DNA from: Macrostomum lignano
Taxonomy: Eukaryota
Direction of reading: 5' to 3'
DNA: 64,000 nt
Assembly (NCBI GenBank): GCA_002269645.1
Contig: NIVC01000054.1
Span: 1-64,000 of the forward strand
Of the stretch, positions 502-64,000 are shown in pieces (position 1 is the first letter of the stretch; every line of letters starts with the position of its first letter). The translations under genes and the position numbers were made by a program. Under the pieces are notes generated by a model, which saw only the letters and a list, made by a program, of their open reading frames with translations, made no database searches and was not told the DNA's origin.

Positions 502-564
502 CTCGGCAAGCCGGCGGGTCAGGCTCTTAATCTGAGTCTCGTACGACTCCTCTCTGGATGCAGA
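502..564 (-). CDS. tpm: Tropomyosin chain-A exon 7a, SASREESYETQIKSLTRRLAE
   Basis: 63 nt, tttcag acceptor, GAG|gtaaat donor, phase 0/0; paralogous to [21 protein letters not shown]. Confidence 0.9.
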
Positions 565-1282
565 CTGAAAGATGGGCAGGCAGTTAGTTGAACTAATGGG
601 CGACTGTTCGCGATCAAGGGCATCAGACTAAGATAGAAATGATGCGGCAAGAGGATGGGGTAGAGACTAGAGAGAATGGAGAATAGGAGATGGAGCTGGT
701 TTGAAGATTGGTTGGTAGGGATGGAGTCAGTCACCAGAATGTCTGAACAGCAAACTGGCATGCACAAGAGATTACAATATTTAAAAGATGTTAACAATTA
801 CAAAAAATCATAATGAAAATCATAAAGTTTGTAAATATAAAGTAATGAAAAACGCCATGCTTCAAACTACTCTTACTCAATACCCCTCCCCCCCCCTAAG
901 TGAACGCATAAAACGCAGCATAGTTCAAACTGAACTGAACTTTGGTCTTCAAGTTTCAAAGAAGCAATGCTTGGATTTTTGCAAATTATACAAGAGGGCA
1001 CGGCACTCGGTGTGTTAATACAGTAATATGCGATGCAAGTCGACGAAGAACGACACGACGAGGCTTTGGAGACTGTTTCTTCTAAAATACTGGTTTTGCT
1101 TACGACTGCTTTGGCGCGCTATGAAAATATGCGACATAAGTTTCGTATTACTGAGCGAAATCGCCTCTGTAGCATAAACTATAATCTAGAACCTAACCCG
1201 TTCGACACCCACCTCAATCCAGAGCCACTCTAGCTAAACCACTCACTCTAGCCTGCAATATAAAAAATTCAGCCAGCCAGCT

Positions 1283-1640
1283 AAACTTTCCTACCCCTCC
1301 GACACCCACCCCATTCTAGCTTAGTCAACCGAGATAAAAGCAGGAGCCTCTAAACTTTTCTACCCCCCCCTGACACCCACCCCATTCTAGCTAGTCAATC
1401 TAGATAAGAGCAGAGCCCGCTAAACTTTCCTACCCCTCCGACACCCACCCCGTTCTAGCTAGTCAATCTAGATAAGAGCCAGAGCCCGCCTAACTTTCCT
1501 ACCCCTCCGACACCCACCCCGTTCTAGCTAGTCAATCTAGATAAGAGCCAGAGCCCGCTAAACTTTCCTACCCCTCCAACACCCACCCCGTTCTAGCTAG
1601 TCAATCTAGATAAGAGCCAGAGCCGCTAAACTTTTCTACG
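1283..1640. repeat. 69-bp tandem repeat, ~5 copies (tropomyosin intron)
   Basis: aactttcctacccctcc recurs at 1423, 1492, 1561. Confidence 0.9.
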
Positions 1641-1802
1641 TACTCACACCTGCCCTCCAGCACATTTTACAGTCTAGACACACCGTAATTTCCTCCAATA
1701 TTAATTTAAAATGCTTTGAACTAATTGACTTATCTTTTTATTGTAGTTCAACTATGGCATACTGCAATCTAATTGCAAATCCAATTCAATCTAAGCCCTT
1801 AC

Positions 1803-1941
1803 AGCCTTGAGACGCTCGGAGAGATCTCGGATAGTTTTCCTCGTAAGACTCCTCGCGCTGGGCGCCTCCTGCTCGGAGATCTCCAACGATTTCATGTTGC
1901 TGCCAACAACGCGCAGCTCCTCTTCCAGTTCCAGGATTTTG
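1803..1941 (-). CDS. tpm: Tropomyosin chain-B fused exon 6b+7b, [46 protein letters not shown]
   Basis: 139 nt = 76+63; atgcag acceptor (phase 2), GCT|gtaagg donor; compensating -1 (~1863) and +1 (~1836) indels. Confidence 0.92.
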
Positions 1942-2233
1942 CTGCATTTCAGTGCACAGTTTCTTTATCGTTGATTTCAATTGCAACTTTATAGTAATTG
2001 TTCATACAAATAGACAGATTAATTTATTCGCTTGAACCATGCCATGCGCAGCGTGCAAACACAGACTTTTCCTATTGTACAATAATTAGCTACTTGTGAG
2101 TAGTGAATACTGACTAAACCTCCATAAATTCTTTATGGCGTTAAAAACATAAAATTATAAAATAATCGAATCGTTAACGTGAATAATGAATATGATGGGC
2201 GCTTAAAAATAACCAAAAAGGTAAACTAAGAAC

Positions 2234-2379
2234 CTTGGCATCCTCTGCTCAAGCGATTTTAGACTGTTAGCGACAGAGTGCAGCTCGTCCGACAGATCCT
2301 TGACTTTGCGCTCAGCGGCCTCGGCCCTCTGTTCCGCCCTGTCCAGCTGGGCTTCGGTCAGAAGCAGCTTCCGGTTGAC
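2234..2379 (-). CDS. tpm: Tropomyosin chain-A fused exon 5a+6a, VNRKLLLTEAQLDRAEQRAEAAERKVKDLSDELHSVANSLKSLE(A/Q)EDAK
   Basis: catcag acceptor, phase 0; 146 nt as assembled vs 147 expected (one G missing near 2250); weak AAG|gttctt donor. Confidence 0.85.
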
Positions 2380-2751
2380 CTGATGACGACATGGCCCCCA
2401 GGTAGGCGGTTAGTAACAACAAATAAATATATACCCTGCCAGCTATATTTAAAACTATTTATGTGCCAGTACTGGGAAGTAAAACTCCCATCTAAGCCGG
2501 AGTTAGAGGATAACGCTAGAATAAGGATTACACTCCTAATAATTACAATTTTTAAACCAACTCAAATTCACTGGCACTATAGTTCTTGGCACCCGAACAG
2601 CTTCATGCTTCTACTTAGTTCTATCTTCTAGCTCTCTAAAAAACACAGCAATTCCCGACAAGCAAAAGCAAGACTCTTGTTTAAAAAACGTTAATGCCAA
2701 AAAACTCGAAAAGCATTTCGAAAAACTTTAAAAAACGTTTCTGACTTCATA

Positions 2752-3135
2752 CTGGGATTTTAGTTGTCAGATTGGGATTTTAGCCGCCAGGTTGGGATTT
2801 TAGCTGTCAGATTGGGATTTTAGCTGTCAGATTGGGATTTTAGCTGTCAGATTGGGATTTTAGCCGCCAGGTTGGGATTTTAGCTGTCAGATTGGGATTT
2901 TAGCTGTCAGATTGGGATTTTAGCTGTCAGATTGGGATTTTAGCCGCCAGGTTGGGATTTTAGCTGTCAGATTGGGATTTTAGCTGTCAGATTGGGATTT
3001 TAGCCGCCACGTTTGGATTTTAGCTGTCAGATTGATTGGGATTTTAGCTGACAGGTTGGGATTTTAGCTGACAGGTTGGGATAATTGTTGTCACATTAGG
3101 ATTTCAGCCGCCAGGTTGGGATTTTAACTTTCAAA
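2752..3135. repeat. 20-bp minisatellite TTGGGATTTTAGCTGTCAGA
   Basis: Direct reading. Confidence 0.95.
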
Positions 3136-3411
3136 TCGGGATCACAAGTGTCAGTTTAGGATTTATATTCGCACTGGGATCATAACAGTTTAAATCTGCA
3201 GTTCATAAATAGAAATCGAGCATGAAAATACAAGCAAGACGGGCAATTAGTAAATAGTTATTATAAATTCTCTAATTTGTTTTTGAGAACTCAAAATATC
3301 CTGGAACAGGTCTCTGGACAAAAACATTCACAACAGGACGAAGATTTAAATGCAGTCATAAAAAAAAACTGAAAACACTTCAATGGGACACGCAGGGCAT
3401 GCCAAGGGCAC

Positions 3412-3600
3412 CTTTCAGCCGCCTCCAGGCGGGACTCGGCCCGCTCGAGGTCCACCTCGGTGATGGCCAGCTTCCTGGCTGCCTCATCATATTTGCGGTC
3501 CGCGTCCTCTGCGATGAACTTCGCCTCCTTGAGCTGCTCCTCCAGTGTGTTGACGCGCTCCTCGTCAGCGATGGAGCGGGTCTCCAGCACCTTGCGGCCT
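3412..3600 (-). CDS. tpm: Tropomyosin chain-B fused exon 4b+5b, [62 protein letters not shown](S)
   Basis: 189 nt = 118+71; ccgcag acceptor, AG|gtgccc donor (phase 2); highly conserved muscle-type sequence. Confidence 0.95.
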
Positions 3601-3632
3601 CTGCGGCAGCGACAGCGGTTCCGTCAGTGTGT

Positions 3633-3633
<1 letters not shown>

Positions 3634-3691
<58 letters not shown>

Positions 3692-3718
3692 TTGTGTCTG
3701 TCTGTCTGTCTGTCTTTG

Positions 3719-3763
<45 letters not shown>

Positions 3764-3793
3764 GCCTGTCTGTCTGTCTGTCTGTCTGTCTGC

Positions 3794-3825
<32 letters not shown>

Positions 3826-3850
3826 TTGTCTGCCTATCTGTCTGTCTGCC

Positions 3851-3883
<33 letters not shown>

Positions 3884-4020
3884 TTGTGTCTGTCTGCCTA
3901 TCTGTCTGTCTGTCTGTCTTTGTGTCTGTCGACTCTGTCTGTCTGTCTGTCTGCCTATCTGTCTGTCTGTCTGCCTATCTGTCTTAGTGTCTGTCTGTCT
4001 TAGTGTCTGTTTGTCAGTCT
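3634..4020. repeat. (TCTG)n microsatellite with CTTAGT variants
   Basis: Direct reading. Confidence 0.95.
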
Positions 4021-4407
4021 GTCTTGTTTATTGCTATCAATCTATTTATCTATCAAGCATGTTTAACTAAACATACTGAATATTCGATAGCATACGAGTA
4101 TATCGGATATAAAAGCGAATGAATGTTTAAAGGAAAAAATGGTCAATAGTAGCACCGGACAAACGCGAATGACCAAATAATTTAGCAAGTTGATAAACGT
4201 TCCAAAAATGAACAAGTTTACAGAAATTTGGTTATCAGAATGACTTCATCTACAAAATAAAAACAACATGAAGTTAAGCGTTTTACCAACAACACTGATG
4301 AATTGCTGTGTTTCCTGCTGGCAAAAACAACTCCCACAGACTAGGCCCACAAAATCCGGAGCCTAAATAAAAAGCATCTTACGGATACCATCAAGCCCTC
4401 TCTGTAC

Positions 4408-4525
4408 CTCTTCGTATCTTTTCTCAGCTTCTTTGGCCGCATCCGTGGCCTCCTTGACCATCTGGTCCAGCGAGCTCAGCCTGGCTTCGTCCTCGTTCTG
4501 GCGACTCTCCAGCACTTTGCGGGAT
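4408..4525 (-). CDS. tpm: Tropomyosin chain-A exon 4a, SRKVLESRQNEDEARLSSLDQMVKEATDAAKEAEKRYEE
   Basis: 118 nt, attag acceptor, GAG|gtacag donor (phase 0); paralogous to canonical exon 4. Confidence 0.9.
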
Positions 4526-4730
4526 CTAATAGAGAGCAGAAATCAATTATTTAAATAAAAGTACAACGGGAACTTTGAATTCTGTCATCCTCTGAAATCG
4601 AAAAGCACGGCACGCGATGGGCATGCGAATATAAAATAGTCATGAAAAGCTAAAAAATACTACTTATTCCTGTTCAGTAGTGTAGTAAGGACATAACGAC
4701 TGGCAAGTATTGATTAACTAATCAGCTCAC

Positions 4731-4864
4731 CGCTCGCTCTCGTCAGCTGCCTTGCTGGCCTCCTCCAGCTTCTGCGTGGCCTCCTGCAGGCGGCCCTCAG
4801 TCTGCTCCAGGTCCTCCTCAATCAGGCGGATGCGCCGGGTCAGGGCCTGCACCTCCGCCTCGGC
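4731..4864 (-). CDS. tpm: Tropomyosin shared exon 3, [44 protein letters not shown](R)
   Basis: 134 nt (canonical size), tcaag acceptor, CG|gtgagc donor, phase 2. Confidence 0.96.
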
Positions 4865-5835
4865 CTTGAGACAGGGAAAAATGAGCAAGATTATAAGATG
4901 CTAGTTACATTATACCCAGCAAAATTCCATTCAGATTAATAATAAGGGCATTGAATAAAAGTTCATACTGTATCGGAATAAAATTCAGTAAAAATATCTT
5001 ATATATCTTATACACATCTTAATCTCTAAGTAAATCTTAGATATTCACAGCTTTGACAAAGACAAAAAATCATTGAATTGAAGTCTTGATTTCATAGACT
5101 TATAGAAGCAATAAAGCATTCTAGATCAGTTTTTAAATAAGAGAACAAATATGACTAGAGTGGATTGAAATTTGGAAAGCTAATTTACAACATATGTATG
5201 GTAAGACTGCATTTTTTACACAATAGTATTTAAATCAAAATTTGCAGTTGCTTCAATGATTGGCATGGAAACTGGCTTATTTGTGAGCTTTATAAAATGT
5301 GTCAAGTCTTTACAAATGAACTGATCCTACTATGCCAACTCCCTGGCCTAAAGTATATAAATATGAAATCACAAATACATTAAATTTAATGGAAATGCAT
5401 TAATTTTTAGGCAAAATGTTACAATTAAGCTGTTTCAAACATTGCATAGTAAGTGAGGTTTCCACCATTAACAGTAGGATTTTTCTGCCTATCAAACTAC
5501 CAATAGGGGGGGGGGATTCCCCCCTTTTTGACAATTTTTTGCTGCACCAGAATGGAGCAACGCAGGCACACAAAATTCAAGAACATAGGCTAAATTTTTG
5601 TTGCACACCTTCTCAAACAAGAATCAAGTCGCCAGCCCTCCAGACTGTTGAGATATTCAACTATTCTGCCAGAAGGTTGGATTATCCCATAAGCACCAGT
5701 GTATTCAGTACACCCCTGTGTGCCAAAGTGCAGCTTTTTTAAGTCTCCAAATTTTATCAGCACATTGACCACATGTGTCTGCATCAGCTCTGACTTTGTT
5801 GGTCACTGGCCTTCACCGAGACAAAGCTTCTAGAC

Positions 5836-6162
5836 CTTCAACAGGTGGCACCAGGTGACTATGAACATCCTGATACTAATTTCTCTAGTTTTGCTGATCA
5901 AACCTTGACAGTGGGTAAGCCTCAACTACTAGGTATCCTCAGCTGGTCTCTCAAGTAGTTAGTCTTCACCTGGATGCCGTTGGCACCTTCAACAGATGAC
6001 ACTAGGTGACTATGAACACCCTGATGCAAATTTCTAGAGTTTCACCAATCAAGACTTGACAGTGGGCAAGCCTTAATTTCTGGACACTTTCAGCTAGTCT
6101 CACGAGCATTTAGCCATCACTTGGACCCCATTGGCGCCTTCAATAGGTGACTATGGACATCC
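5836..6162. repeat. Diverged ~151-bp tandem repeat, ~2.2 copies
   Basis: ccttcaa...ggtgactatg(a/g)aca(t/c)cc at about 5836, 5987, 6138. Confidence 0.7.
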
Positions 6163-6701
6163 TTTTGCAACTATGTCAGGTTTTTCTTATCAAGCTTCAA
6201 TAATGATAAGATTGAGAAGGTGTGCGACAAAAAGTTAGCCCATGTTCTTGAATTTTGTGTGCCTATATTGCTCTGTTCCAGTGTAGCAAAAAATTGACAG
6301 GTGGGGGGGGGAATTTTCTTCCTAGTTTTACTGTTAAGATATTTAATTCATCTAAAGGCAGGTGGCAGCTAAGCTGCCTAGCCAAAACTGGACTTGTATT
6401 GCCACTTGCCTATCACATTAAGTCAGCTATGGCAAGGAGGCACATTTTCTATTTTAAGCTGCATTTTCTAGGAACTTAATAAGCACCCCTCATAAAACAA
6501 CAAAAGTAAACTATTTGCATTTTTGTTTTAAAAAATCACAACTTTTAATTCATAAAAACAGATTTTTTATGGTATATCATTTTTTTCAAAAAAATGATTA
6601 TATCTCTTAATATAGGTAGCACTAAAATGAGTTGAATTTTTGGCACCAATTTTTAATCAGTTTGAATTCAATATATTTATATTGATGTCTAGATATCTAT
6701 G

Positions 6702-7105
6702 CAGTAGTGAGCCAGGGGGGATATAAGAATATATCACCCCATCTTGATGAGTTATAAGAAACAAAAATGAGGTTTTTTGATAAAAAAATGCAAAATACAG
6801 TGGCTTAGACTTAGCAAAATTCCCAAAAATTGGCCCATTTCACTTGTAAATTACTAATAAAATGTTTTAAATGATATTTCAGCAAATCCCTACCCTAGTT
6901 TTTAAAGGCTAAAATACCTTAGTCAAGACAGATATCTGCTGGCTTTATTTTGATTTCAACAAAGTAAAGTTTTTTAGCCTAAAAACATGGTTTTTGTACC
7001 TTCTTAAATGTATATTTTAAGCATAAATTGCAAAAAAACTATTGAATCAGTCTAAAACTTTGTCCCTTAAAGTAACCCCCTTTTCAAAATCCTAGCTTTG
7101 CCACT
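6702..7105. mobile_element. Possible degenerate MITE
   Basis: cagtagtgagccagggggg ... cccccttttcaaaatcctagctttgccact imperfect inverted termini. Confidence 0.2.
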
Positions 7106-7399
7106 ATATCTGTTATATTTAGAATATTGGTATCCAACCTAGGGCACTTTATTATATACTAAGAGTAAGATGCTAGCTAAATAGTGACCAACTCATTGAA
7201 TAGTACCAGCGAGCTTATTTGACCAGCGTAAGCACTGCCACATTAAAATATTGCTATCTAATAAATGTAAAATGTCTTGTTATCAGCAATTAGGCATACT
7301 TGCTAATTGCTGTTTTAGAATTTAGTTAAATTTTAAAACAAAAAAATTGCAGAATTGGTACTAGAAAATTCTGCAGTAAATATTAAATATTTAGAGTAC

Positions 7400-7540
7400 C
7401 TGAGTGCGCAGATTCTTTTCGTTTTCTAGCTCAGCACCTTTGGTAGAAAGTTCATCCTGAACAGAATCCAGATCATTTTTCAGTGCCTGCAATCTCTGCT
7501 TCAGTGAAGCTAGAACAGATTCCTTATTGTTTGTCGTCAT
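7400..7540 (-). CDS. tpm: Tropomyosin alternative first exon 1b (low-MW/cytoskeletal isoform), MTTNNKESVLASLKQRLQALKNDLDSVQDELSTKGAELENEKNLRTQ
   Basis: 47 codons, heptad pattern, resembles short-isoform exon 1b (..ERKLRET type end); CAG|gtactc phase-0 donor fits exon 3. Confidence 0.88.
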
Positions 7541-9460
7541 TGTAACTGATATAGCTAAAATAAGCACAAAGCTATATAACTATATAAAGAAAGTTTTAGA
7601 AGGATAATTATTTAGGAAAGAACGTTCTTTACTACTTTTTTATTGCTGATTCTTGTTCCGCAGTTTCTAGGAATATTTTAATGCTTGAAAATTTTTTAGT
7701 GCCTTTAAAACAAAAAAACAACCTTTAGTGGCTTTTAAAGCCATTAAGTAGCAGTTAGAATGACATGAATCGACCAAGTTATATTATTCGTTTTAAGAAT
7801 TTTTGAAAGATTTTTTTAATGTGCATACAAGCACCTTTATAAATATTGGTTTGTTAATTCAAATTTCAAAGCGTAAAACTAAATGGATGGAACTTGCACC
7901 CAATATCGCTCATCTGAACTCCGTAGCAGATTTTTATATTTCCGTCCTATTACTTCCCCGTAAAAAAATTGGACTTCCACCGACGTACCCGACGTCGATG
8001 GATGTCTATTAGCAATGGGTACTTCTTTAATACGCCTTACGCGAGATGCCAGGGTACAGTTACTAGCAATTTCATTATTTTGCATTTTGTTCACTTTTTG
8101 CCGTCTTGAATGCATATGTACACCTCAGTAATTTCTGATATAATATTGATGAACGTCTGGTAAACTACTTAACTCATTTAGAATTGTCGAACTCTGATTC
8201 TTGTATTACATTTTCATTCTGGGCCATCCCCCCATAAGCCCTAAAGACACAAATTTTAACGTAGGGAAACAATATTTCTTGATGACTAAATTATATGTCC
8301 CGATTCGAACGTCTGGTTAAGCCTATAAAAATCCGGATCATTTTGCATGTACATGCATCAAGGACCTCTGAAGTCACTTCGTTACACAGGACGTAACTCT
8401 CCGGAATAGTGGATAATTTTTGATGGGTAAATTCACGATGCTATGCTTAGCGATTTTTTTCATATGATAGCAACTCCACATGTATATAAGTGAATAATAG
8501 AGGATGAATTTGACAGGAAAACATTATTTTTTACTATATAAATGACTTTTCTGGTGTTTTATAACGTCTATTTATTGCGTTGAATTGAGTTTCTTGAGTG
8601 CAAACTGAGTATTACTATACGTTTAGTGTTACGAGGAGTTCCACTCGTTGAGACTAAAATTTAAGGTGGGATGGGATTATGGTGGCCCAGTCCCAGTTGT
8701 GACAGAATCCCTGAATAGGTAAATATATTCTTCAAAGCAGTCTGTTCTTTAAGTTTTGTAATCTGCCTAATCAGTGTACGTACGATACTGCATTTTATGC
8801 TTCTGTGTATTCATTTTCGTTCGAATTCGTTGTGTTTTGATGTTTTTTTCAAGCAATATTATTTTTACTGATCTATGAAATGCAATTGTTTCCGGTTATG
8901 TTTACAATGAGTTTATGTTCTTTGTTTTTACATTTTTCAACATTCATTTGTTTCCAATTGCCTTCCATAAATATACTACTTTTTGTTCCCTTCTTTGTCA
9001 CAAAAACTGACCTTAAAATCATCTTGTTTCTTACACTGACTCGAAGTCAGAGGTCAAAAGGTTAGCTAATTGAACTGACTATGAGCATTACTTTTTTACT
9101 GGTTAATAAACGTGGTGTGTGTTGCTTTCCACTGCCAAAAAGAAGTCAAGATTTTGCATTGAAAGGCATGCAATCTACGGGGTTACTGTACTAAAAAGTC
9201 AATTCTTTCGTATTCTGGGGGGGGAATAAATAAAAGGCCATGCAGCAATCGAAAGAGCACAGAAATCTGCCCGATTCATCAATCCGTTTAGACGTGCCAC
9301 AATTGCAAAATTTGGCCTTCAAAAAATTTTCCACGATTTTGGAGTGTTCAGTCCTTCTACTTAAGTAGTCCTTGACATGCATGAGCTAAATTAGTTTTGG
9401 TTTTGCCACTGGTAAAAGGCTTTAACATCACAAAAATGATTATATATATAATGGACTTAC

Positions 9461-9638
9461 ATCGCTGGCTCGCTTCTCTGTTCCCTCCAAATTGGTGTTA
9501 GTGGTGGTGAGAGACTCCTGGGCGGTGTCGAGATCCTGCTGCAGCTGCTGGAACTTCTTCTGCATCTCGCCCATCTCCTCTTCCTTCTTGGCCATCTCAG
9601 CCTCCTTCTCCTTCAGCTTGGTCTCCAGCTGGTCGGCC
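9461..9638 (-). CDS. tpm: Tropomyosin exon 2, (A)ADQLETKLKEKEAEMAKKEEEMGEMQKKFQQLQQDLDTAQESLTTTNTNLEETEKRASD
   Basis: tttcag acceptor, GAT|gtaagt donor; exons 1a+2 = 240 nt = 80 codons, as in canonical tropomyosin. Confidence 0.95.
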
Positions 9639-9729
9639 CTGAAATGATTTTGTAAATAAAATACAGTTGTTCATCATTGCGTCTTGGTGGAACGATTCAA
9701 AAGCAAAAAATAATATGCAAACCACGTAC

Positions 9730-9791
9730 GCGTCAACGGCATTCTCCTTCTCTAGCTTCATCACCAGCATCTTCTTCTTGATGGCGTCCAT
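9730..9791 (-). CDS. tpm: Tropomyosin exon 1a (high-MW/muscle-type start), MDAIKKKMLVMKLEKENAVD
   Basis: ATG at 9791; classic MDAIKKKM start, close to schistosome tropomyosin; donor GC|GTACGT, phase 2. Confidence 0.95.
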
Positions 9792-13673: not shown

Positions 13674-13780
13674 GTATGATACCTACTACTTACAGTAGAC
13701 TTGATTGAAAACGCGAGCATTGGTGCAAAAATTCTATTCAGCTATTGATAGTAGCATTTTACAAAATTTTAGCCACTCAC

Positions 13781-14139
13781 TTGTAGACCGGAGCCGCGAT
13801 TATGTTCAGGAAGTTGACCTGCAGCTGCGGGATGTCCGCCTTGTCCCTGTCCATGCCCTCCGCCGGCTGCTTGCCCAGCGATTTCTCTTTGTCACCAAGG
13901 CTGAAGAACTCCTGATAGATGAGCTTAGCAACCTGCCTGGTGTTCTTCCACACCTTGGTCTGGTCGCTGAGGTCCGAGGCGGTCATGAGCAGGCAGAGCA
14001 TGAGGTAGCGGTGCTGCTGCTTGGACCAGTCCGGGCCCGACTCAGCCACCGCATCGATTTCAGACTTGATTTTCAAGTGGTGCGCCAGGTCCGTGGCCAG
14101 GATGATGTCACGGATGATGTCCAGCACGGCTGAGTACTC
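13781..14139 (-). CDS. PDE2A: PDE2 catalytic domain exon (DIILATDLAHHL...LLMTASDLSDQTK...DIPQLQVNF...PVYK)
   Basis: Near-identical motifs to PDE2A incl. ATDL, metal-ligand D of SDL, invariant Gln and clamp Phe; cag/gtgagt sites. Confidence 0.96.
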
Positions 14140-14189
14140 CTGAGGGGAGGGCGGCACTCCAGCTGATCACTGCCAACTGTGCAATCTTG

Positions 14190-48750: not shown

Positions 48751-48824
48751 TGGCCGGGGAGGGGCTCGAACCCTCGACCTTCGCGTTATCAGCACGACGC
48801 TCTAACCAACTGAGCTACTCGGCC
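48751..48824 (-). tRNA. trnI-GAT: tRNA-Ile, anticodon GAT
   Basis: GGCCGAGTAGCTCAGTTGGTTAGAGCGTCGTGCTGATAACGCGAAGGTCGAGGGTTCGAGCCCCTCCCCGGCCA folds to a cloverleaf; intact A and B boxes; one A6:C67 mismatch; no encoded CCA. Confidence 0.93.
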
Positions 48825-61223: not shown

Positions 61224-61943
61224 CCTCCGAAGGGATGCCACGGCAGAAGCAGCAGGGCCTGAGCGACTCCAATACCCAGCCGCCGCTCCTGCCGCCACCG
61301 CCTCCCCCGGCTCCGCCGCCACCGCCGTCGCAAACTCAGCGGCCTTCGCCGTCGCCTTCGCCCTCGCCGCCGCCTCCGCCGCCGCCCCAGCAGCAGCCGA
61401 AGCTGCAGCCGCACCATCTGGAAGACATCTGCGAAGCCGCGGCCAACATGCACTTCATTGACGATGGCTCGCTCGACGAGCTCATGGCCGACATCGAGGA
61501 CGCTGACGTCCTGAGCCTCATTCGCGTCAACGTCGGCGGCAGACGCTTCGAGGTGCTCAAATCGACGCTGATGCGGCAGCACTTCATCTACGAAAAGCTG
61601 CTGCACGACGGCGTGTACAGGGCGGGCCAGGAGGAATACTTCTTCGACCGCGACCCCACCGTGTTCAACATCGTGCTGTGGTACTGCCGCTACGGCGAGC
61701 TGCACGTGCCCCACCACCTGTGCGGCCCGCTGCTGGAGCGGGAGCTTGCCCTCTGGGGCATCCAGCCGGCTATTGAGATTCAGAACTGCTGCGTGAGCCA
61801 CCTGATGGACACTAAAAGCCGATTAATCAGTCTGAAGCAGTTTGAGAACTTCTTCAAAGAGGAGATGGAAACGGAGCCGGTGGTGCCGCTGGACTGCATA
61901 GAGAACGACGATTTTGGCGGTCCGACATCCAACAGCTCCAAGG
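61224..61943 (+). CDS. Shaw: Shaw/Kv3 channel exon 2: poly-Pro linker plus T1 tetramerisation domain
   Basis: VNVGG..F, EYFFDRDP, ELH.....CGPL...EL..WGI......CC (Kv3-type Zn motif); ctccag / G|gtgaga. Confidence 0.93.
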
Positions 61944-61977
61944 GTGAGAATTTCGGGCACGGAGCACAGGGGGATGG

Positions 61978-62464
61978 CCAGGGACTAGCGATGAGTCGGA
62001 TCCCTCAGGGACTAGCAATGAGTCGGCTCCCTCAGGGACTAGCAATGAGTCGGATCCCTCAGGGACTAGCGATGAGTCGTATCCCTCAGGGACTAGCAAT
62101 GAGTCGACTCCCTCAGGGACTAGCGATGAGTCGGATCCCTCAGGGACTAGCGATGAGTCGGATCCCTCAGGGACTAGCGATGAGTCGTATCCCTCAGGGA
62201 CTAGCGATGAGTCGGATCCCTCAGGGACTAGCGATGAGTCGGATCCCTCAGGGACTAGCAATGAGTCGGCTCCCTCAGGGACTAGCAATGAGTCGACTCC
62301 CTCAGGGACTAGCGATGAGTCGGATCCCTCAGGGACTAGCGATGAGTCGGATCCCTCAGGGACTAGCGATGAGTCGTATCCCTCAGGGACTAGCGATGAG
62401 TCGGATCCCTCAGGGACTAGCGATGAGTCGGATCCCTCAGGGACTAGCGATGAGTCGACTCCCT
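61978..62464. repeat. 27-bp minisatellite CAGGGACTAGCGATGAGTCGGATCCCT in Kv intron 2
   Basis: Direct reading. Confidence 0.97.
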
Positions 62465-62677
62465 CCTTGAAATGGCGCTGGAAGTTCCATTTAAGCAAGG
62501 GGCTCAGCGGTAAACTTACGACCCTGGTTCGACCCCGTGTCCGGCCACATTAATTTGGGACTTGTGCTCAATGGCCTCAGGCAACTCACACCCTCTAGGG
62601 CCAACCCCAAGGCACAGAGGATGAGAAAGGCGGGGCTGCTGTACATCCAACTCACCGAGGCAGTTCAACACCCTCAG

Positions 62678-63225
62678 GCTGGCAGAGAGTCAAAGCTTTC
62701 TTGGCCTCGCTGCGTCGGCGCTGCTGGAAGATTCTCGACCATCCGTCGTCGGGCTTCCCGGCGACCGTGTACGCGGTGCTTCTGACCATCACGGTTCTGT
62801 ACGCGGTGTTCAGCTTCGTCGCAAGCACGTCGGAGCAGTTCCAGCGGCTGCTGACCCAGCGAGAGATCCAGTTCTACTCCAACAAGCACCCCTCCTGGTA
62901 CGGCAACCACACGGACGCGCAGACCCGGATCAAAGCCGATTGGCTGGTCTTCTCCGACTGGTTCGCCTTCGGCGTGCTCACCTTCGACTTCCTGGTGCGT
63001 CTGCTGTGCTGCAAGAACAAGCTGGCCTACTTCAAGAACGCCTACACCGTGATCGACCTGCTCTCCATCCTTCCGTTCTACGTGAACGAGCTGCTGAAGC
63101 TCACCTGGGGCATCATCGAATTCTCCGAGCCTAACAGCTTCGGGGTGACTGAGTACATCGCCTTCCTGAAGATCTCGCTGTTCGTCAGGCTGCTCAGAAT
63201 CGGTCGGCACTATCGAGGACTGCAG
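62678..63225 (+). CDS. Shaw: Shaw/Kv3 channel exon 3: S1-S4
   Basis: WKILDHPSS, DFLVR (S2), IDLLSILPFY (S3), FVRLLRIGRH (S4); cctcag / CAG|gtgcgt. Confidence 0.93.
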
Positions 63226-63640
63226 GTGCGTCTGCTCTGCCATGTACCTTGAAAACGGTTTGTTTCTAATCGTTGTGACTCTCACTGTAAGATTCTCAGT
63301 GGGCATTGTGATGCTTTTTCAAGCATAACTTTCGACTGGGGAATGACCAAAATGTGCCTCTTCAAAATGGCAACAAAGTTGAGATGGCAGCTGCTTCCGT
63401 TTTTGTTCTGAGATTAAAAAATGTCAGAACTTCCCGGACAGCCCCTTGCACCATTGAGCCTTTCATCAGCTGCTGTGGAAAAGTTTTAGAAGGACACGCA
63501 AATCAATTTTCTCTGTTTCCAGTCTTCAATCCAAACCAGTACAAAAGCTTCCCAAGGAGCCAAAAATCACAGGCACTTCATCAACTCTTTGTAATTGATT
63601 GTTCTTTTACTAATCTTCTCTGACCCTCCCGCCCGCGCAG

Positions 63641-63935
63641 GTGCTCATCTACACGTTGAAAACGTCGCTCCGCGACCTCATGCTTATGGGCGTGTTCGTG
63701 GCGCTCGGCACCCTGCTGTTCAGCACGCTGATCTTCTTCTGCGAGAAGTCGCGCAGCGGCGGCGAGACGCACCTGGCCCCGACAGCGCCGCCCGACAAGA
63801 AAAAAGTCGACTGCTCAAAGTGTCAGAAAGGTGACACCGATTCGAAGTTCAACTCCATGTTCGACGGCTTCTGGTGGTCGCTGGTTACTATGACAACTGT
63901 TGGATACGGAGACCTGGTGCCGCAGACCAGCTCAG
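63641..63935 (+). CDS. Shaw: Shaw/Kv3 channel exon 4: S4-S5 linker, S5, turret, pore (FWWSLVTMTTVGYGDLVPQT); gene continues past the window
   Basis: K+ filter TTVGYGD; cgcgcag acceptor; 3' boundary (G|gtcggg) less certain. Confidence 0.92.
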
Positions 63936-64000
63936 GTCGGGCTCTGAGACCTTCTGTTTTTATAAGAAACTAATCCGCTACCTAGATTAGCGGTCCACTT

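What the first reader, a model, noticed from the sequence alone, without database searches (positions are those of the whole stretch)
502..4525. Two-track tropomyosin: interleaved, equal-length exon chains locked by different intron positions
Seen: after shared exon 3 the gene carries two full versions of residues ~125-234, interdigitated in the order 4a, 4b5b, 5a6a, 6b7b, 7a. Chain A is 118+147+63 = 328 nt (147 after restoring one base); chain B is 189+139 = 328 nt. Relative to the canonical 118/71/76/63 exon set, chain A lacks the 5/6 intron and chain B lacks the 4/5 and 6/7 introns. Internal junctions are therefore phase 0/0 in A and phase 2 in B. The cross-overs 4a>4b5b, 4a>6b7b, 4b5b>5a6a, 4b5b>7a and 5a6a>6b7b all frameshift; only 6b7b>7a stays in frame. 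Known: tropomyosins use single mutually exclusive exons and two promoters. Inference: this is a ~110-residue all-or-none module switch (conserved muscle-type B vs divergent A), effectively two genes woven together and enforced by reading frame/NMD. It probably arose by block duplication plus reciprocal intron loss.
Basis: partly seen in the sequence, partly recalled or inferred. Interest (0 to 1): 0.85.

Follow-up and report, generated by a model that had tools for sequence, protein, structure and literature searches.

The report
Flatworm-type tropomyosin gene with fused alternative exons
This is the middle of a flatworm-type tropomyosin gene that carries two interleaved alternative exon sets, a layout already known in parasitic flatworms, here simplified by the loss of three introns so that only all-A or all-B full-length proteins stay in frame.

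Summary
The anatomy is real. On the minus strand, constitutive exon 3 is followed by 4a (118 nt), 4b5b (189), 5a6a (146 as written), 6b7b (139) and 7a (63). All have AG/GT borders and coding-like GC3.

The interleaving is neither new nor a misassembly. Four cestode and trematode tropomyosin genes have the same order (4a 4b 5b 5a 6a 6b 7b 7a), but with every canonical intron present. The window gene has lost exactly the three introns that separate neighbouring same-set exons. This refutes block duplication and supports reciprocal intron loss.

After one-base repairs, only 3-4a-5a6a-7a and 3-4b5b-6b7b give full-length open products. So the all-or-none logic holds on paper.

As written, both sets are damaged. 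5a6a lacks one base, so set A hits a stop in 7a. 6b7b carries a -1/+1 pair that scrambles 11 codons. All three lesions are homopolymer-length changes within about 420 bp. They are either local consensus errors or very recent decay.

No transcripts from this organism are available. Duplicated, isoform-assigned tropomyosin exons are published (S. mansoni TpmII; "internal paralogy"). This is a new variant of a known kind, of modest interest.

The parts
9730..9791 (-). Exon 1a. It holds the ATG of the high-molecular-weight isoform (MDAIKKKMLVMKLEKENAVD) and 62 coding nt, followed by a phase-2 intron.
   Evidence: H. diminuta has the same 62-nt exon 1a, and so does contig L004.
9461..9638 (-). Exon 2, 178 nt, residues 21-80.
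   Evidence: E = 4e-18 against the cestode exon 2.
7400..7540 (-). Alternative first exon 1b, 47 codons (MTTNNKESVLASLKQRLQ...NLRTQ). It would start a low-molecular-weight isoform from an internal promoter. It is AT-rich (GC3 0.40).
   Evidence: It ends ...LRTQ|AEAEV, like vertebrate exon 1b joined to exon 3.
4731..4864 (-). Constitutive exon 3, 134 nt, residues 81-125. It ends in phase 2.
   Evidence: E = 5e-19.
4408..4525 (-). Exon 4a (set A), 118 nt, residues 126-164, with canonical borders.
3412..3600 (-). Exon 4b5b (set B), 189 nt, residues 126-188. The 4|5 intron is absent. The exon is intact.
   Evidence: Exons 4b and 5b are separate in L001, L002, L005 and L006.
2234..2379 (-). Exon 5a6a (set A), 146 nt as written where 147 is expected. 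The 5|6 intron is absent. One base is missing near 2234-2250 (GAGCAGAGGATGCCAAG).
   Evidence: Exons 5a and 6a are separate in all four relatives.
1803..1941 (-). Exon 6b7b (set B), 139 nt. The 6|7 intron is absent. It carries a -1 at about 1858-1868 (GGC-GCC) and a +1 at about 1830-1842 (GAAAAC). Together they scramble 11 codons.
   Evidence: Exons 6b and 7b are separate in all four relatives.
502..564 (-). Exon 7a (set A), 63 nt, residues 214-234 (SASREESYETQIKSLTRRLAE).
   Evidence: There are no exon 8 or 9 matches in 1-501, so the 3' end of the gene lies off the window.
4300..4316 (-). 5' arm of a candidate intronic RNA helix, about 92-108 nt downstream of the 4a donor.
2638..2654 (-). 3' arm of the same helix, about 260 nt upstream of the 5a6a acceptor. 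Pairing would loop out exon 4b5b.
3633..4024 (.). (TCTG)n microsatellite, about 98 copies, in intron 4a|4b5b.
2753..3142 (.). 20-nt minisatellite, about 19 copies, in intron 4b5b|5a6a.
1275..1639 (.). 69-nt minisatellite, about 5 copies, in intron 6b7b|7a.

Best explanation
Positions 502-9791 (minus strand) hold the 5' two-thirds of a flatworm-type tropomyosin gene.

Layout. Two alternative starts (1a+2, or 1b) join constitutive exon 3. After exon 3, residues 126-234 are encoded twice:
- Set B (4b5b, 6b7b) is the conserved muscle-type sequence.
- Set A (4a, 5a6a, 7a) is a divergent version. It is probably cytoskeletal or non-muscle, by analogy with S. mansoni TpmII.3.

Origin (inferred from comparison). 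Exons 4, 5, 6 and 7 were each duplicated in tandem in an ancestor. This gave the order 4a 4b | 5b 5a | 6a 6b | 7b 7a, which cestodes and trematodes still have with all introns. In that order, same-set exons are neighbours at three places. In the lineage of this window, precisely those three introns (4b|5b, 5a|6a, 6b|7b) were lost, probably by recombination with spliced cDNA. The introns that house an exon of the other set had to stay.

Consequence (shown in silico). No separate 5b, 6a or 7b exon is left. Every full-length, in-frame product is therefore all-A or all-B. Cross-overs shift the frame and would presumably be removed by NMD. The exception is 6b7b+7a, which adds 21 residues in frame.

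Not shown. Whether both sets are expressed, mutually exclusive and NMD-policed in this animal is inferred, not demonstrated.

The indels. The three one-base indels confined to 5a6a and 6b7b are most likely local consensus errors. The region lies between two minisatellites. The displaced ancestral frame is still perfectly readable.
For: Exon map, borders and phases.

The best protein hits are flatworm tropomyosins. A PDE exon elsewhere in the window also hits monogenean and schistosome proteins best among named sequences.

Gene-model read-throughs in Hymenolepis, Paragonimus and Echinococcus contain both sets in the same order.

Exact mapping gives 1a, 2, (1b), 3, 4a, 4b, 5b, 5a, 6a, 6b, 7b, 7a, 8b, 8a, (9a), 9b, with all canonical introns, in four loci:
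- H. diminuta L001
- P. westermani L002
- E. granulosus L005 and S. margrebowiei L006

Set A keeps the tropomyosin heptad core. 24 of 31 a/d positions are hydrophobic, including D137, Y162, E218 and Y221, the same as set B and human.

Path enumeration: only the two pure sets are full-length and open after repair.

Set-A exons are really co-spliced in a relative. Logan transcript contig L007 joins 5a-6a-7a-8a-9a. It also carries a precise out-of-frame 5b>5a junction, so cross-set splicing does occur and does break the frame.

S. mansoni TpmII has six mutually exclusive duplicated pairs after common exon E. Its isoform TpmII.3, with a high degree of exon substitution relative to the muscle-type isoform, was cloned and is expressed in every life-cycle stage tested (PMC4026961).

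Intron loss is active in this gene family. Contigs L003 and L004 are B-only tropomyosin genes with exons 2-7b fused.

On the indels: all three are homopolymer-length changes within 1830-2250. About 740 nt of the other tropomyosin exons, and about 1.4 kb of Kv-channel and PDE coding sequence in the window, show none.
Against: There is no transcript, EST or protein from this organism. The closest tropomyosin in the databases is 58% identical, and a metagenome scan found no relative.

As written, set A is out of frame and set B has a proline-containing scrambled patch that breaks the heptad at Y221. If these lesions are real, the locus is not functional.

Orthology of the window's set A with the neodermatan set A is weakly supported. 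The evidence is the shared order (chance about 1/16) and two A-specific residues, Q134 and A233. By identity, the window's set A is closer to B-type exons (46-50%) than to other A sets (31-33%). Independent duplication in the same order is therefore not excluded, although the test for lineage-specific A/B sharing found no signal for it.
Confidence: 0.75

Rival explanations
1. The locus is a freshly disabled copy, either an unprocessed pseudogene or a decaying allele or paralogue. On this reading the three indels are real, set A is frameshifted, and set B encodes a defective coiled coil.
For: 5a6a is 146 nt, which gives a stop in 7a. 6b7b has a -1/+1 pair. The lesions are concentrated: 3 in 285 nt against 0 in about 2.1 kb of other conserved coding sequence in the window. 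A uniform sequencing-error model does not predict that.
Against: There are no stop codons, splice-site losses or excess substitutions in any exon. The heptad core and GC3 are preserved. The ancestral frame between the -1 and +1 still reads AQREESYEE perfectly, so the changes are either extremely recent or artefacts. All three are homopolymer run-length changes. They lie within about 420 bp, between the 69-mer minisatellite at 1275-1639 and the 20-mer minisatellite at 2753-3142. That is the typical setting for unpolished long-read consensus errors.
Confidence: 0.2
2. Set A (4a, 5a6a, 7a) is a dead relic that is never spliced. On this reading the gene makes only B-type tropomyosin.
For: Set A is the divergent one and carries the frame-breaking lesion. 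The 5a6a donor (AAG|gttctt) is weak.
Against: Set A keeps 24 of 31 core positions, AG/GT borders and GC3 of 0.71-0.74. The positionally equivalent A exons are expressed in cestodes (L007). S. mansoni also expresses an isoform, TpmII.3, built largely from the alternative exon copies (PMC4026961). Retention of the introns that house A exons, while the A-free introns were lost, argues that these exons matter.
Confidence: 0.08
3. One reading: one block duplication of exons 4-7, followed by interleaving and reciprocal intron loss.
For: Both sets sum to the same canonical length of 328 nt.
Against: Four relatives show adjacent pairs with canonical introns in both copies. A block duplication gives 4-5-6-7-4'-5'-6'-7' and would then need several rearrangements to reach this order.
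Confidence: 0.03
4. The interleaving is a misassembly that merges two paralogous tropomyosin genes.
For: The region is full of tandem repeats, and such regions are prone to assembly error.
Against: The identical order is found in four independently assembled flatworm genomes. There is a single exon 3 and single 5' exons, and no duplicated flanks.
Confidence: 0.02

Closest known systems
Neodermatan tropomyosin genes with internally duplicated exons: S. mansoni TpmII (Smp_031770), cestode tpm-1/tpm-2, and here L001, L002, L005 and L006
   Same: Two alternative starts, a common exon 3, a 62-nt exon 1a, and duplicated exons 4-7 in the same order a b b a a b b a. One conserved muscle-type set and one divergent set.
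   Different: In those genes every copy is a separate exon with the canonical sizes 118/71/76/63. A and B copies are therefore interchangeable in frame. In the window, 4b+5b, 5a+6a and 6b+7b are fused, so no in-frame full-length chimera is possible.
'Internal paralogy' of tropomyosin (Irimia et al. 2010 Mol Biol Evol, as summarised in PMC3342872)
   Same: Duplicated exons are each assigned to one of two isoforms, so that one gene in effect holds two genes.
   Different: The concept as summarised does not involve intron loss that fixes the linkage between exon copies. The primary paper could not be read here.
Vertebrate TPM1-4, C. elegans lev-11 and Drosophila Tm1
   Same: Alternative promoters, mutually exclusive exon pairs, and exon lengths that are not multiples of 3, so that double inclusion shifts the frame.
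   Different: Their pairs are separate and are combined in several ways. No staggered fused exons have been reported for them, to my knowledge.
Arthropod Mhc genes and their 'partially processed' paralogues (PMC2257972)
   Same: Lineage-specific intron loss around clusters of mutually exclusive exons. Paralogues that keep one variant of each cluster with exons fused. The B-only contigs L003 and L004 are analogous.
   Different: A different gene family. The fusions there remove the alternatives rather than interlocking two sets.
RNA-bridge control of mutually exclusive exons (Dscam, 14-3-3xi, ATE1; PMC7797038)
   Same: A candidate 17-bp intronic helix flanks the exon to be skipped (4b5b).
   Different: It is a single helix of modest significance. 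No competing selector arms were found and no conservation data exist.

Membership tests
Tropomyosin (Pfam PF00261) | Sequence similarity to tropomyosin over the whole encoded part | tested here: met
   (hits carry PF00261; best E = 3e-57). Searches give exon-by-exon matches.
Tropomyosin (Pfam PF00261) | Unbroken heptad repeat with hydrophobic a/d core through residues 126-234 in both versions | tested here: inconclusive
   Met after one-base repairs (24-25 of 31 core positions). As written, set A is frameshifted and set B loses E218 and Y221.
Flatworm tropomyosin gene with duplicated mutually exclusive exons (S. mansoni TpmII type) | Alternative first exons (1a+2 or 1b) joining a common exon 3 | tested here: met
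   Only the sequences and splice sites were examined, not transcripts.
Flatworm tropomyosin gene with duplicated mutually exclusive exons (S. mansoni TpmII type) | Two copies of exons 4, 5, 6 and 7 in the order a b | b a | a b | b a | tested here: met
   Window. Relatives.
Flatworm tropomyosin gene with duplicated mutually exclusive exons (S. mansoni TpmII type) | Each copy is a separate exon at the canonical intron positions 4|5, 5|6 and 6|7 | tested here: not met
   4b5b (189 nt), 5a6a (146/147 nt) and 6b7b (139 nt) are single exons. This is why it is filed as a variant.
Flatworm tropomyosin gene with duplicated mutually exclusive exons (S. mansoni TpmII type) | The copies are used in a mutually exclusive way in mRNA | not testable with these tools
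   No transcripts of this organism are available. It is shown in relatives only (PMC4026961; L007).
Frame/NMD-enforced mutually exclusive splicing | Joint inclusion or cross-over of alternatives shifts the reading frame | tested here: met
   for all cross-overs except 6b7b+7a. For 5a6a>6b7b it holds only after the one-base repair.
Frame/NMD-enforced mutually exclusive splicing | The aberrant products are degraded by NMD | not testable with these tools
   This needs UPF1/SMG1 knock-down with RNA-seq.
Unprocessed pseudogene | Frame-disrupting lesions in coding exons | tested here: met
   A -1 in 5a6a and a -1/+1 pair in 6b7b. Whether these are real or assembly errors is unknown.
Unprocessed pseudogene | General decay: stop codons, lost splice sites, relaxed constraint across the gene | tested here: not met
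   All the other exons are intact and all borders are AG/GT.
RNA-bridge (docking/selector) controlled mutually exclusive exons | Complementary intronic elements that flank the skipped exon, beyond chance and conserved | tested here: inconclusive
   One 14-nt perfect match (17 bp with G.U pairs). For that intron pair P is about 0.01. For the maximum over all pairs, 8 of 300 shuffles reach it. z = 3.5 in the donor-by-acceptor scan. Conservation cannot be tested.

The most novel reading that the evidence does not exclude
In this lineage, intron loss has turned four independently choosable pairs of mutually exclusive exons into a hard-wired two-track module. One decision at exon 3 commits the transcript to an all-A or all-B 109-residue segment, and the reading frame acts as proof-reader. 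A 17-bp intronic helix (4316-4300 with 2654-2638) helps by looping out 4b5b so that the 4a donor finds the 5a6a acceptor. This would be a clear natural example of exon fusion fixing the coordination between distant alternative splicing choices.
Probability: 0.3. Interest if true: 0.5.

Novelty: new variant of a known kind. Interest (0 to 1): 0.3.

Why it matters
How cells coordinate several distant alternative-splicing choices within one transcript is an open question. Flatworm tropomyosin genes need such coordination at up to six exon pairs.

This locus shows a simple evolutionary solution. Losing the introns between neighbouring same-set exons makes mixed full-length isoforms impossible. It also illustrates a rule for intron retention: introns that house alternative exons stay, while the others can go.

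The practical points are more mundane. Gene predictors will mis-model such loci; the public models for relatives read through both sets. The three indels also flag a local quality problem, or a dying gene copy, in this assembly.

Tried and rejected
- Whole-intron RNA duplex folding to look for bridging structures was too slow, and it gave global rather than local pairings (timed out). It was replaced by exact-match and ungapped-helix statistics. Of the inverted repeats listed, only the 4a/5a6a helix stood out. The pairs that would loop out 5a6a (3295-3310 with 1925-1940) and 7a (1697-1735 with 460-498) were not significant in the donor-by-acceptor scan.
- A profile search with three aligned set-A sequences returned only five fragments.
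- A metagenome scan for close relatives found one arthropod-like tropomyosin cDNA, which is irrelevant.
- The key primary paper, Irimia et al. 2010 (PMC2912468), is not held.
- Rfam found only a tRNA in the window.
- An alternative 3' splice site 11 nt inside 7a (CCAG|AG) would put the as-written 146-nt 5a6a back in frame. I rejected it for two reasons. It deletes four residues from a coiled coil whose A-set counterparts in the relatives have the canonical length. The skipped codons (S-A-S-R) are also homologous to A-S/A-Q-R of set B.
- An internal donor at the canonical 5|6 position of 5a6a does not exist (the sequence there is CG|CA).
- Independent recent duplication, or gene conversion between A and B, in this lineage: no excess of A=B lineage-specific residues was found.
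- I did not run the representative-library search or structure prediction. Neither would discriminate between the hypotheses.


Full report
**What is there**

The finding lies on the minus strand. Three-frame translation and a tblastn with human TPM1 show a tropomyosin gene that runs from 9791 down to the left edge of the window.

| Exon | Coordinates | Length | Note |
|---|---|---|---|
| 1a | 9791-9730 | 62 nt | ATG of the high-molecular-weight isoform |
| 2 | 9638-9461 | 178 nt | |
| 1b | 7540-7400 | 47 codons | alternative first exon |
| 3 | 4864-4731 | 134 nt | constitutive |
| 4a | 4525-4408 | 118 nt | set A |
| 4b5b | 3600-3412 | 189 nt | set B |
| 5a6a | 2379-2234 | 146 nt | set A |
| 6b7b | 1941-1803 | 139 nt | set B |
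| 7a | 564-502 | 63 nt | set A |

Every exon has an AG acceptor and a GT donor. Exon GC3 is 0.70-0.91 (0.40 for 1b), against intron GC of 0.32-0.44. Exon peptides taken from cestode and trematode genes hit each window exon. There is no match to exons 8 or 9 in 1-501, so the 3' end of the gene is off the window.

**Two defects in the sequence as written**

First, 5a6a is 146 nt, not 147. The path 3-4a-5a6a-7a then reads ...SLEQRMPSLHPERSRTRLRLRA* and stops inside 7a. It did not say that, as written, 5a6a>6b7b is the junction that stays in frame.

Second, 6b7b has a -1 at GGC-GCC and a +1 at GAAAAC, 26 nt apart. This shows in the frame jump of the tblastn matches: [10 protein letters not shown] sits in one frame and [12 protein letters not shown] in another. 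It also shows in a DNA alignment with three related 6b7b sequences. The net length is unchanged, but 11 codons read [10 protein letters not shown] instead of [10 protein letters not shown]. That removes the core residues E218 and Y221 and introduces a proline.

All three lesions are homopolymer-length changes (AA>A, GG>G, AAA>AAAA). They fall within 1830-2250, between the 69-mer minisatellite at 1275-1639 and the 20-mer minisatellite at 2753-3142. Several other stretches have none:
- the other tropomyosin exons, about 740 nt
- a Kv-channel T1 and transmembrane region
- a PDE catalytic exon in the same window

The ancestral frame between the -1 and the +1 is still perfectly readable. The changes are therefore either artefacts of a poorly polished patch or very recent mutations. 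I consider consensus error more likely (about 3:1) but cannot decide with these tools.

**Where the arrangement comes from**

The best protein hits are flatworm tropomyosins: Spirometra at 58%, then Echinococcus, Hymenolepis, Paragonimus and Schistosoma. Nothing is closer, so this organism is not in the databases. A PDE exon elsewhere in the window likewise hits monogenean and schistosome proteins best among named sequences.

Several public gene models are over-long because they read through both exon sets in the same interleaved order. I fetched four loci and mapped the exons:
- H. diminuta L001
- P. westermani L002
- E. granulosus L005 and S. margrebowiei L006

All four have the order 1a (62 nt in H. 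diminuta), 2, (1b), 3, 4a, 4b, 5b, 5a, 6a, 6b, 7b, 7a, 8b, 8a, (9a), 9b. Every canonical intron is present in both sets.

The interleaving is therefore old and real. It is the footprint of exon-by-exon tandem duplication, in which the conserved copy lies first or second at random. With that order, same-set exons are neighbours at 4b-5b, 5a-6a and 6b-7b. The window gene lacks exactly these three introns and keeps every intron that contains an exon of the other set.

Positions 4|5, 5|6 and 6|7 are the ancient ones shared with vertebrates (118/71/76/63). Loss in this lineage is thus far more parsimonious than gain elsewhere.

The result refutes block duplication and misassembly. It supports reciprocal intron loss, and it adds a reason for which introns were lost.

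Intron loss is clearly active in this gene family. Two environmental or Logan contigs (L003, L004) carry B-only tropomyosin genes in which exons 2-7b are one exon. They keep the 62-nt exon 1a (seen directly in L004; L003 begins at the matching acceptor) and the 7|8 intron, and L004 also keeps the 8|9 intron.

**Is the window's set A the same as the neodermatan set A?**

The support is modest. It consists of the shared order (about 1/16 by chance) and two A-specific residues, Q134 and A233. By identity, the window's set A is closer to B-type exons (46-50%) than to other A sets (31-33%). That is expected if the A sets evolve fast, but it also fits independent duplication. Tests for lineage-specific sharing between A and B found no signal either way. 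In either case both sets must descend from copies that still had all three introns, so at least three losses are required.

**How it would work**

After the one-base repairs I enumerated all 32 ordered subsets of the five alternative exons.
- Only 3-4a-5a6a-7a and 3-4b5b-6b7b give the full 109-residue segment in frame.
- The other open paths are large in-frame skips (for example 3-4a-8) or 6b7b+7a, which adds 21 residues.
- 4a>4b5b, 4b5b>5a6a and 4b5b>7a meet stops 19-43 nt after the junction.
- 4a>6b7b and 5a6a>6b7b shift the frame into the unseen exon 8.

In the relatives, A and B copies have equal length and phase, so mixed isoforms are in frame. Here the fusions make mixed full-length isoforms impossible. 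Expression, exclusivity and NMD remain inferences.

Indirect support comes from several sources:
- Set A keeps the heptad core (24 of 31 positions).
- A cestode transcript contig (L007) joins 5a-6a-7a-8a-9a. At its 5' end it also carries a precise 5b>5a junction that shifts the frame, so cross-set splicing happens and is out of frame.
- S. mansoni TpmII has six mutually exclusive duplicated pairs. Its isoform TpmII.3 shows a high degree of exon substitution relative to the muscle-type isoform, has less than 50% identity to TpmII.7, and is expressed in every life-cycle stage tested (PMC4026961).

**A possible helper**

The longest complement between any two introns of the region is a 14-nt perfect match, 17 bp with G.U pairs. 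One arm lies about 100 nt downstream of the 4a donor (4316-4300). The other lies about 260 nt upstream of the 5a6a acceptor (2654-2638). In the pre-mRNA it would loop out 4b5b.

For that intron pair P is about 0.01. For the maximum over all 15 pairs, 8 of 300 shuffles reach it. It is the only one of 20 donor-by-acceptor comparisons to stand out (z = 3.5). The 14-mer occurs only at these two places in 64 kb. This is a lead, not a finding.

**Comparison with what is known**

Duplicated, mutually exclusive tropomyosin exons and two promoters are textbook. Six duplicated pairs after a common exon are published for S. mansoni (PMC4026961). The idea that each copy is assigned to one of two isoforms ('internal paralogy', Irimia et al. 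2010) is summarised in PMC3342872. I could not read the primary paper.

I found no description of staggered exon fusions that interlock the two sets. Arthropod Mhc genes offer the nearest parallel for intron loss around such clusters.

**Verdict**

This is a genuine, derived variant of a known flatworm gene architecture. It comes with a tidy evolutionary explanation and a logical frame lock, but with unverified expression and three suspicious indels. Interest is modest (0.3).

Noticed in passing
window 4300-4316 and 2638-2654: A 14-nt perfect inverted repeat (17 bp with G.U pairs) in the introns on either side of exon 4b5b. In the pre-mRNA it would bring the 4a donor close to the 5a6a acceptor. 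It is the longest inter-intron complement in the locus (8 of 300 shuffles reach it), and the 14-mer has only these two copies in 64 kb.
   Followed up: partly
L007 1-392 (Logan SRR32634150 contig): A cestode tropomyosin transcript with set-A exons 5a-6a-7a-8a-9a joined. Its 5' end is a precise 5b>5a junction (GCTGAAAG|GCAACTCAG). That is a double inclusion which shifts the frame and stops after 12 codons. It is a natural cross-set splice product.
   Followed up: partly
L003 1-839 and L004 419-1454: Intron-poor, B-only tropomyosin genes from unidentified relatives. Exons 2 to 7b form one exon. The intron after codon 20 and the 7|8 intron are retained, and in L004 the 8|9 intron as well. They resemble the 'partially processed' paralogues described for arthropod Mhc.
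   Followed up: partly
window 1275-1639, 2753-3142, 3633-4024: Three of the four introns between the alternative exons hold a large tandem array: a 69-mer x5, a 20-mer x19 and (TCTG)n x98. The whole window is unusually rich in minisatellites; many long 'ORFs' are translated repeats.
   Followed up: no
window 7400-7540: The alternative first exon 1b has a much lower GC3 (0.40) than all the other tropomyosin exons (0.70-0.91).
   Followed up: no
window 13777-14157 (-), perhaps up to about 15900: A cyclic-nucleotide phosphodiesterase catalytic exon (PF00233, profile positions 96-222). The best hits overall are unnamed Logan contigs at 57-61% identity. The best named hits are Protopolystoma and Schistosoma at 56-59%.
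   Followed up: partly
window 61235-64000 (+): A voltage-gated K+ channel gene: a T1/BTB_2 domain, then S1-S4, then S5 and the pore (TVGYGD), in three open stretches. It runs off the right end of the window. A QGLAMSRIP minisatellite lies after the T1 exon.
   Followed up: no
window 48751-48824 (-): One tRNA gene. It is the only Rfam match at gathering threshold in the window.
   Followed up: no
L001, L002, L005, L006: The public gene models for H. diminuta, P. westermani, E. granulosus and S. margrebowiei tropomyosins (P0071, P0021, P0005, P0011) concatenate mutually exclusive exons and intron read-through. They are not real isoforms. In H. diminuta the 5' high-molecular-weight exons are also split off as a separate 'gene'.
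   Followed up: yes
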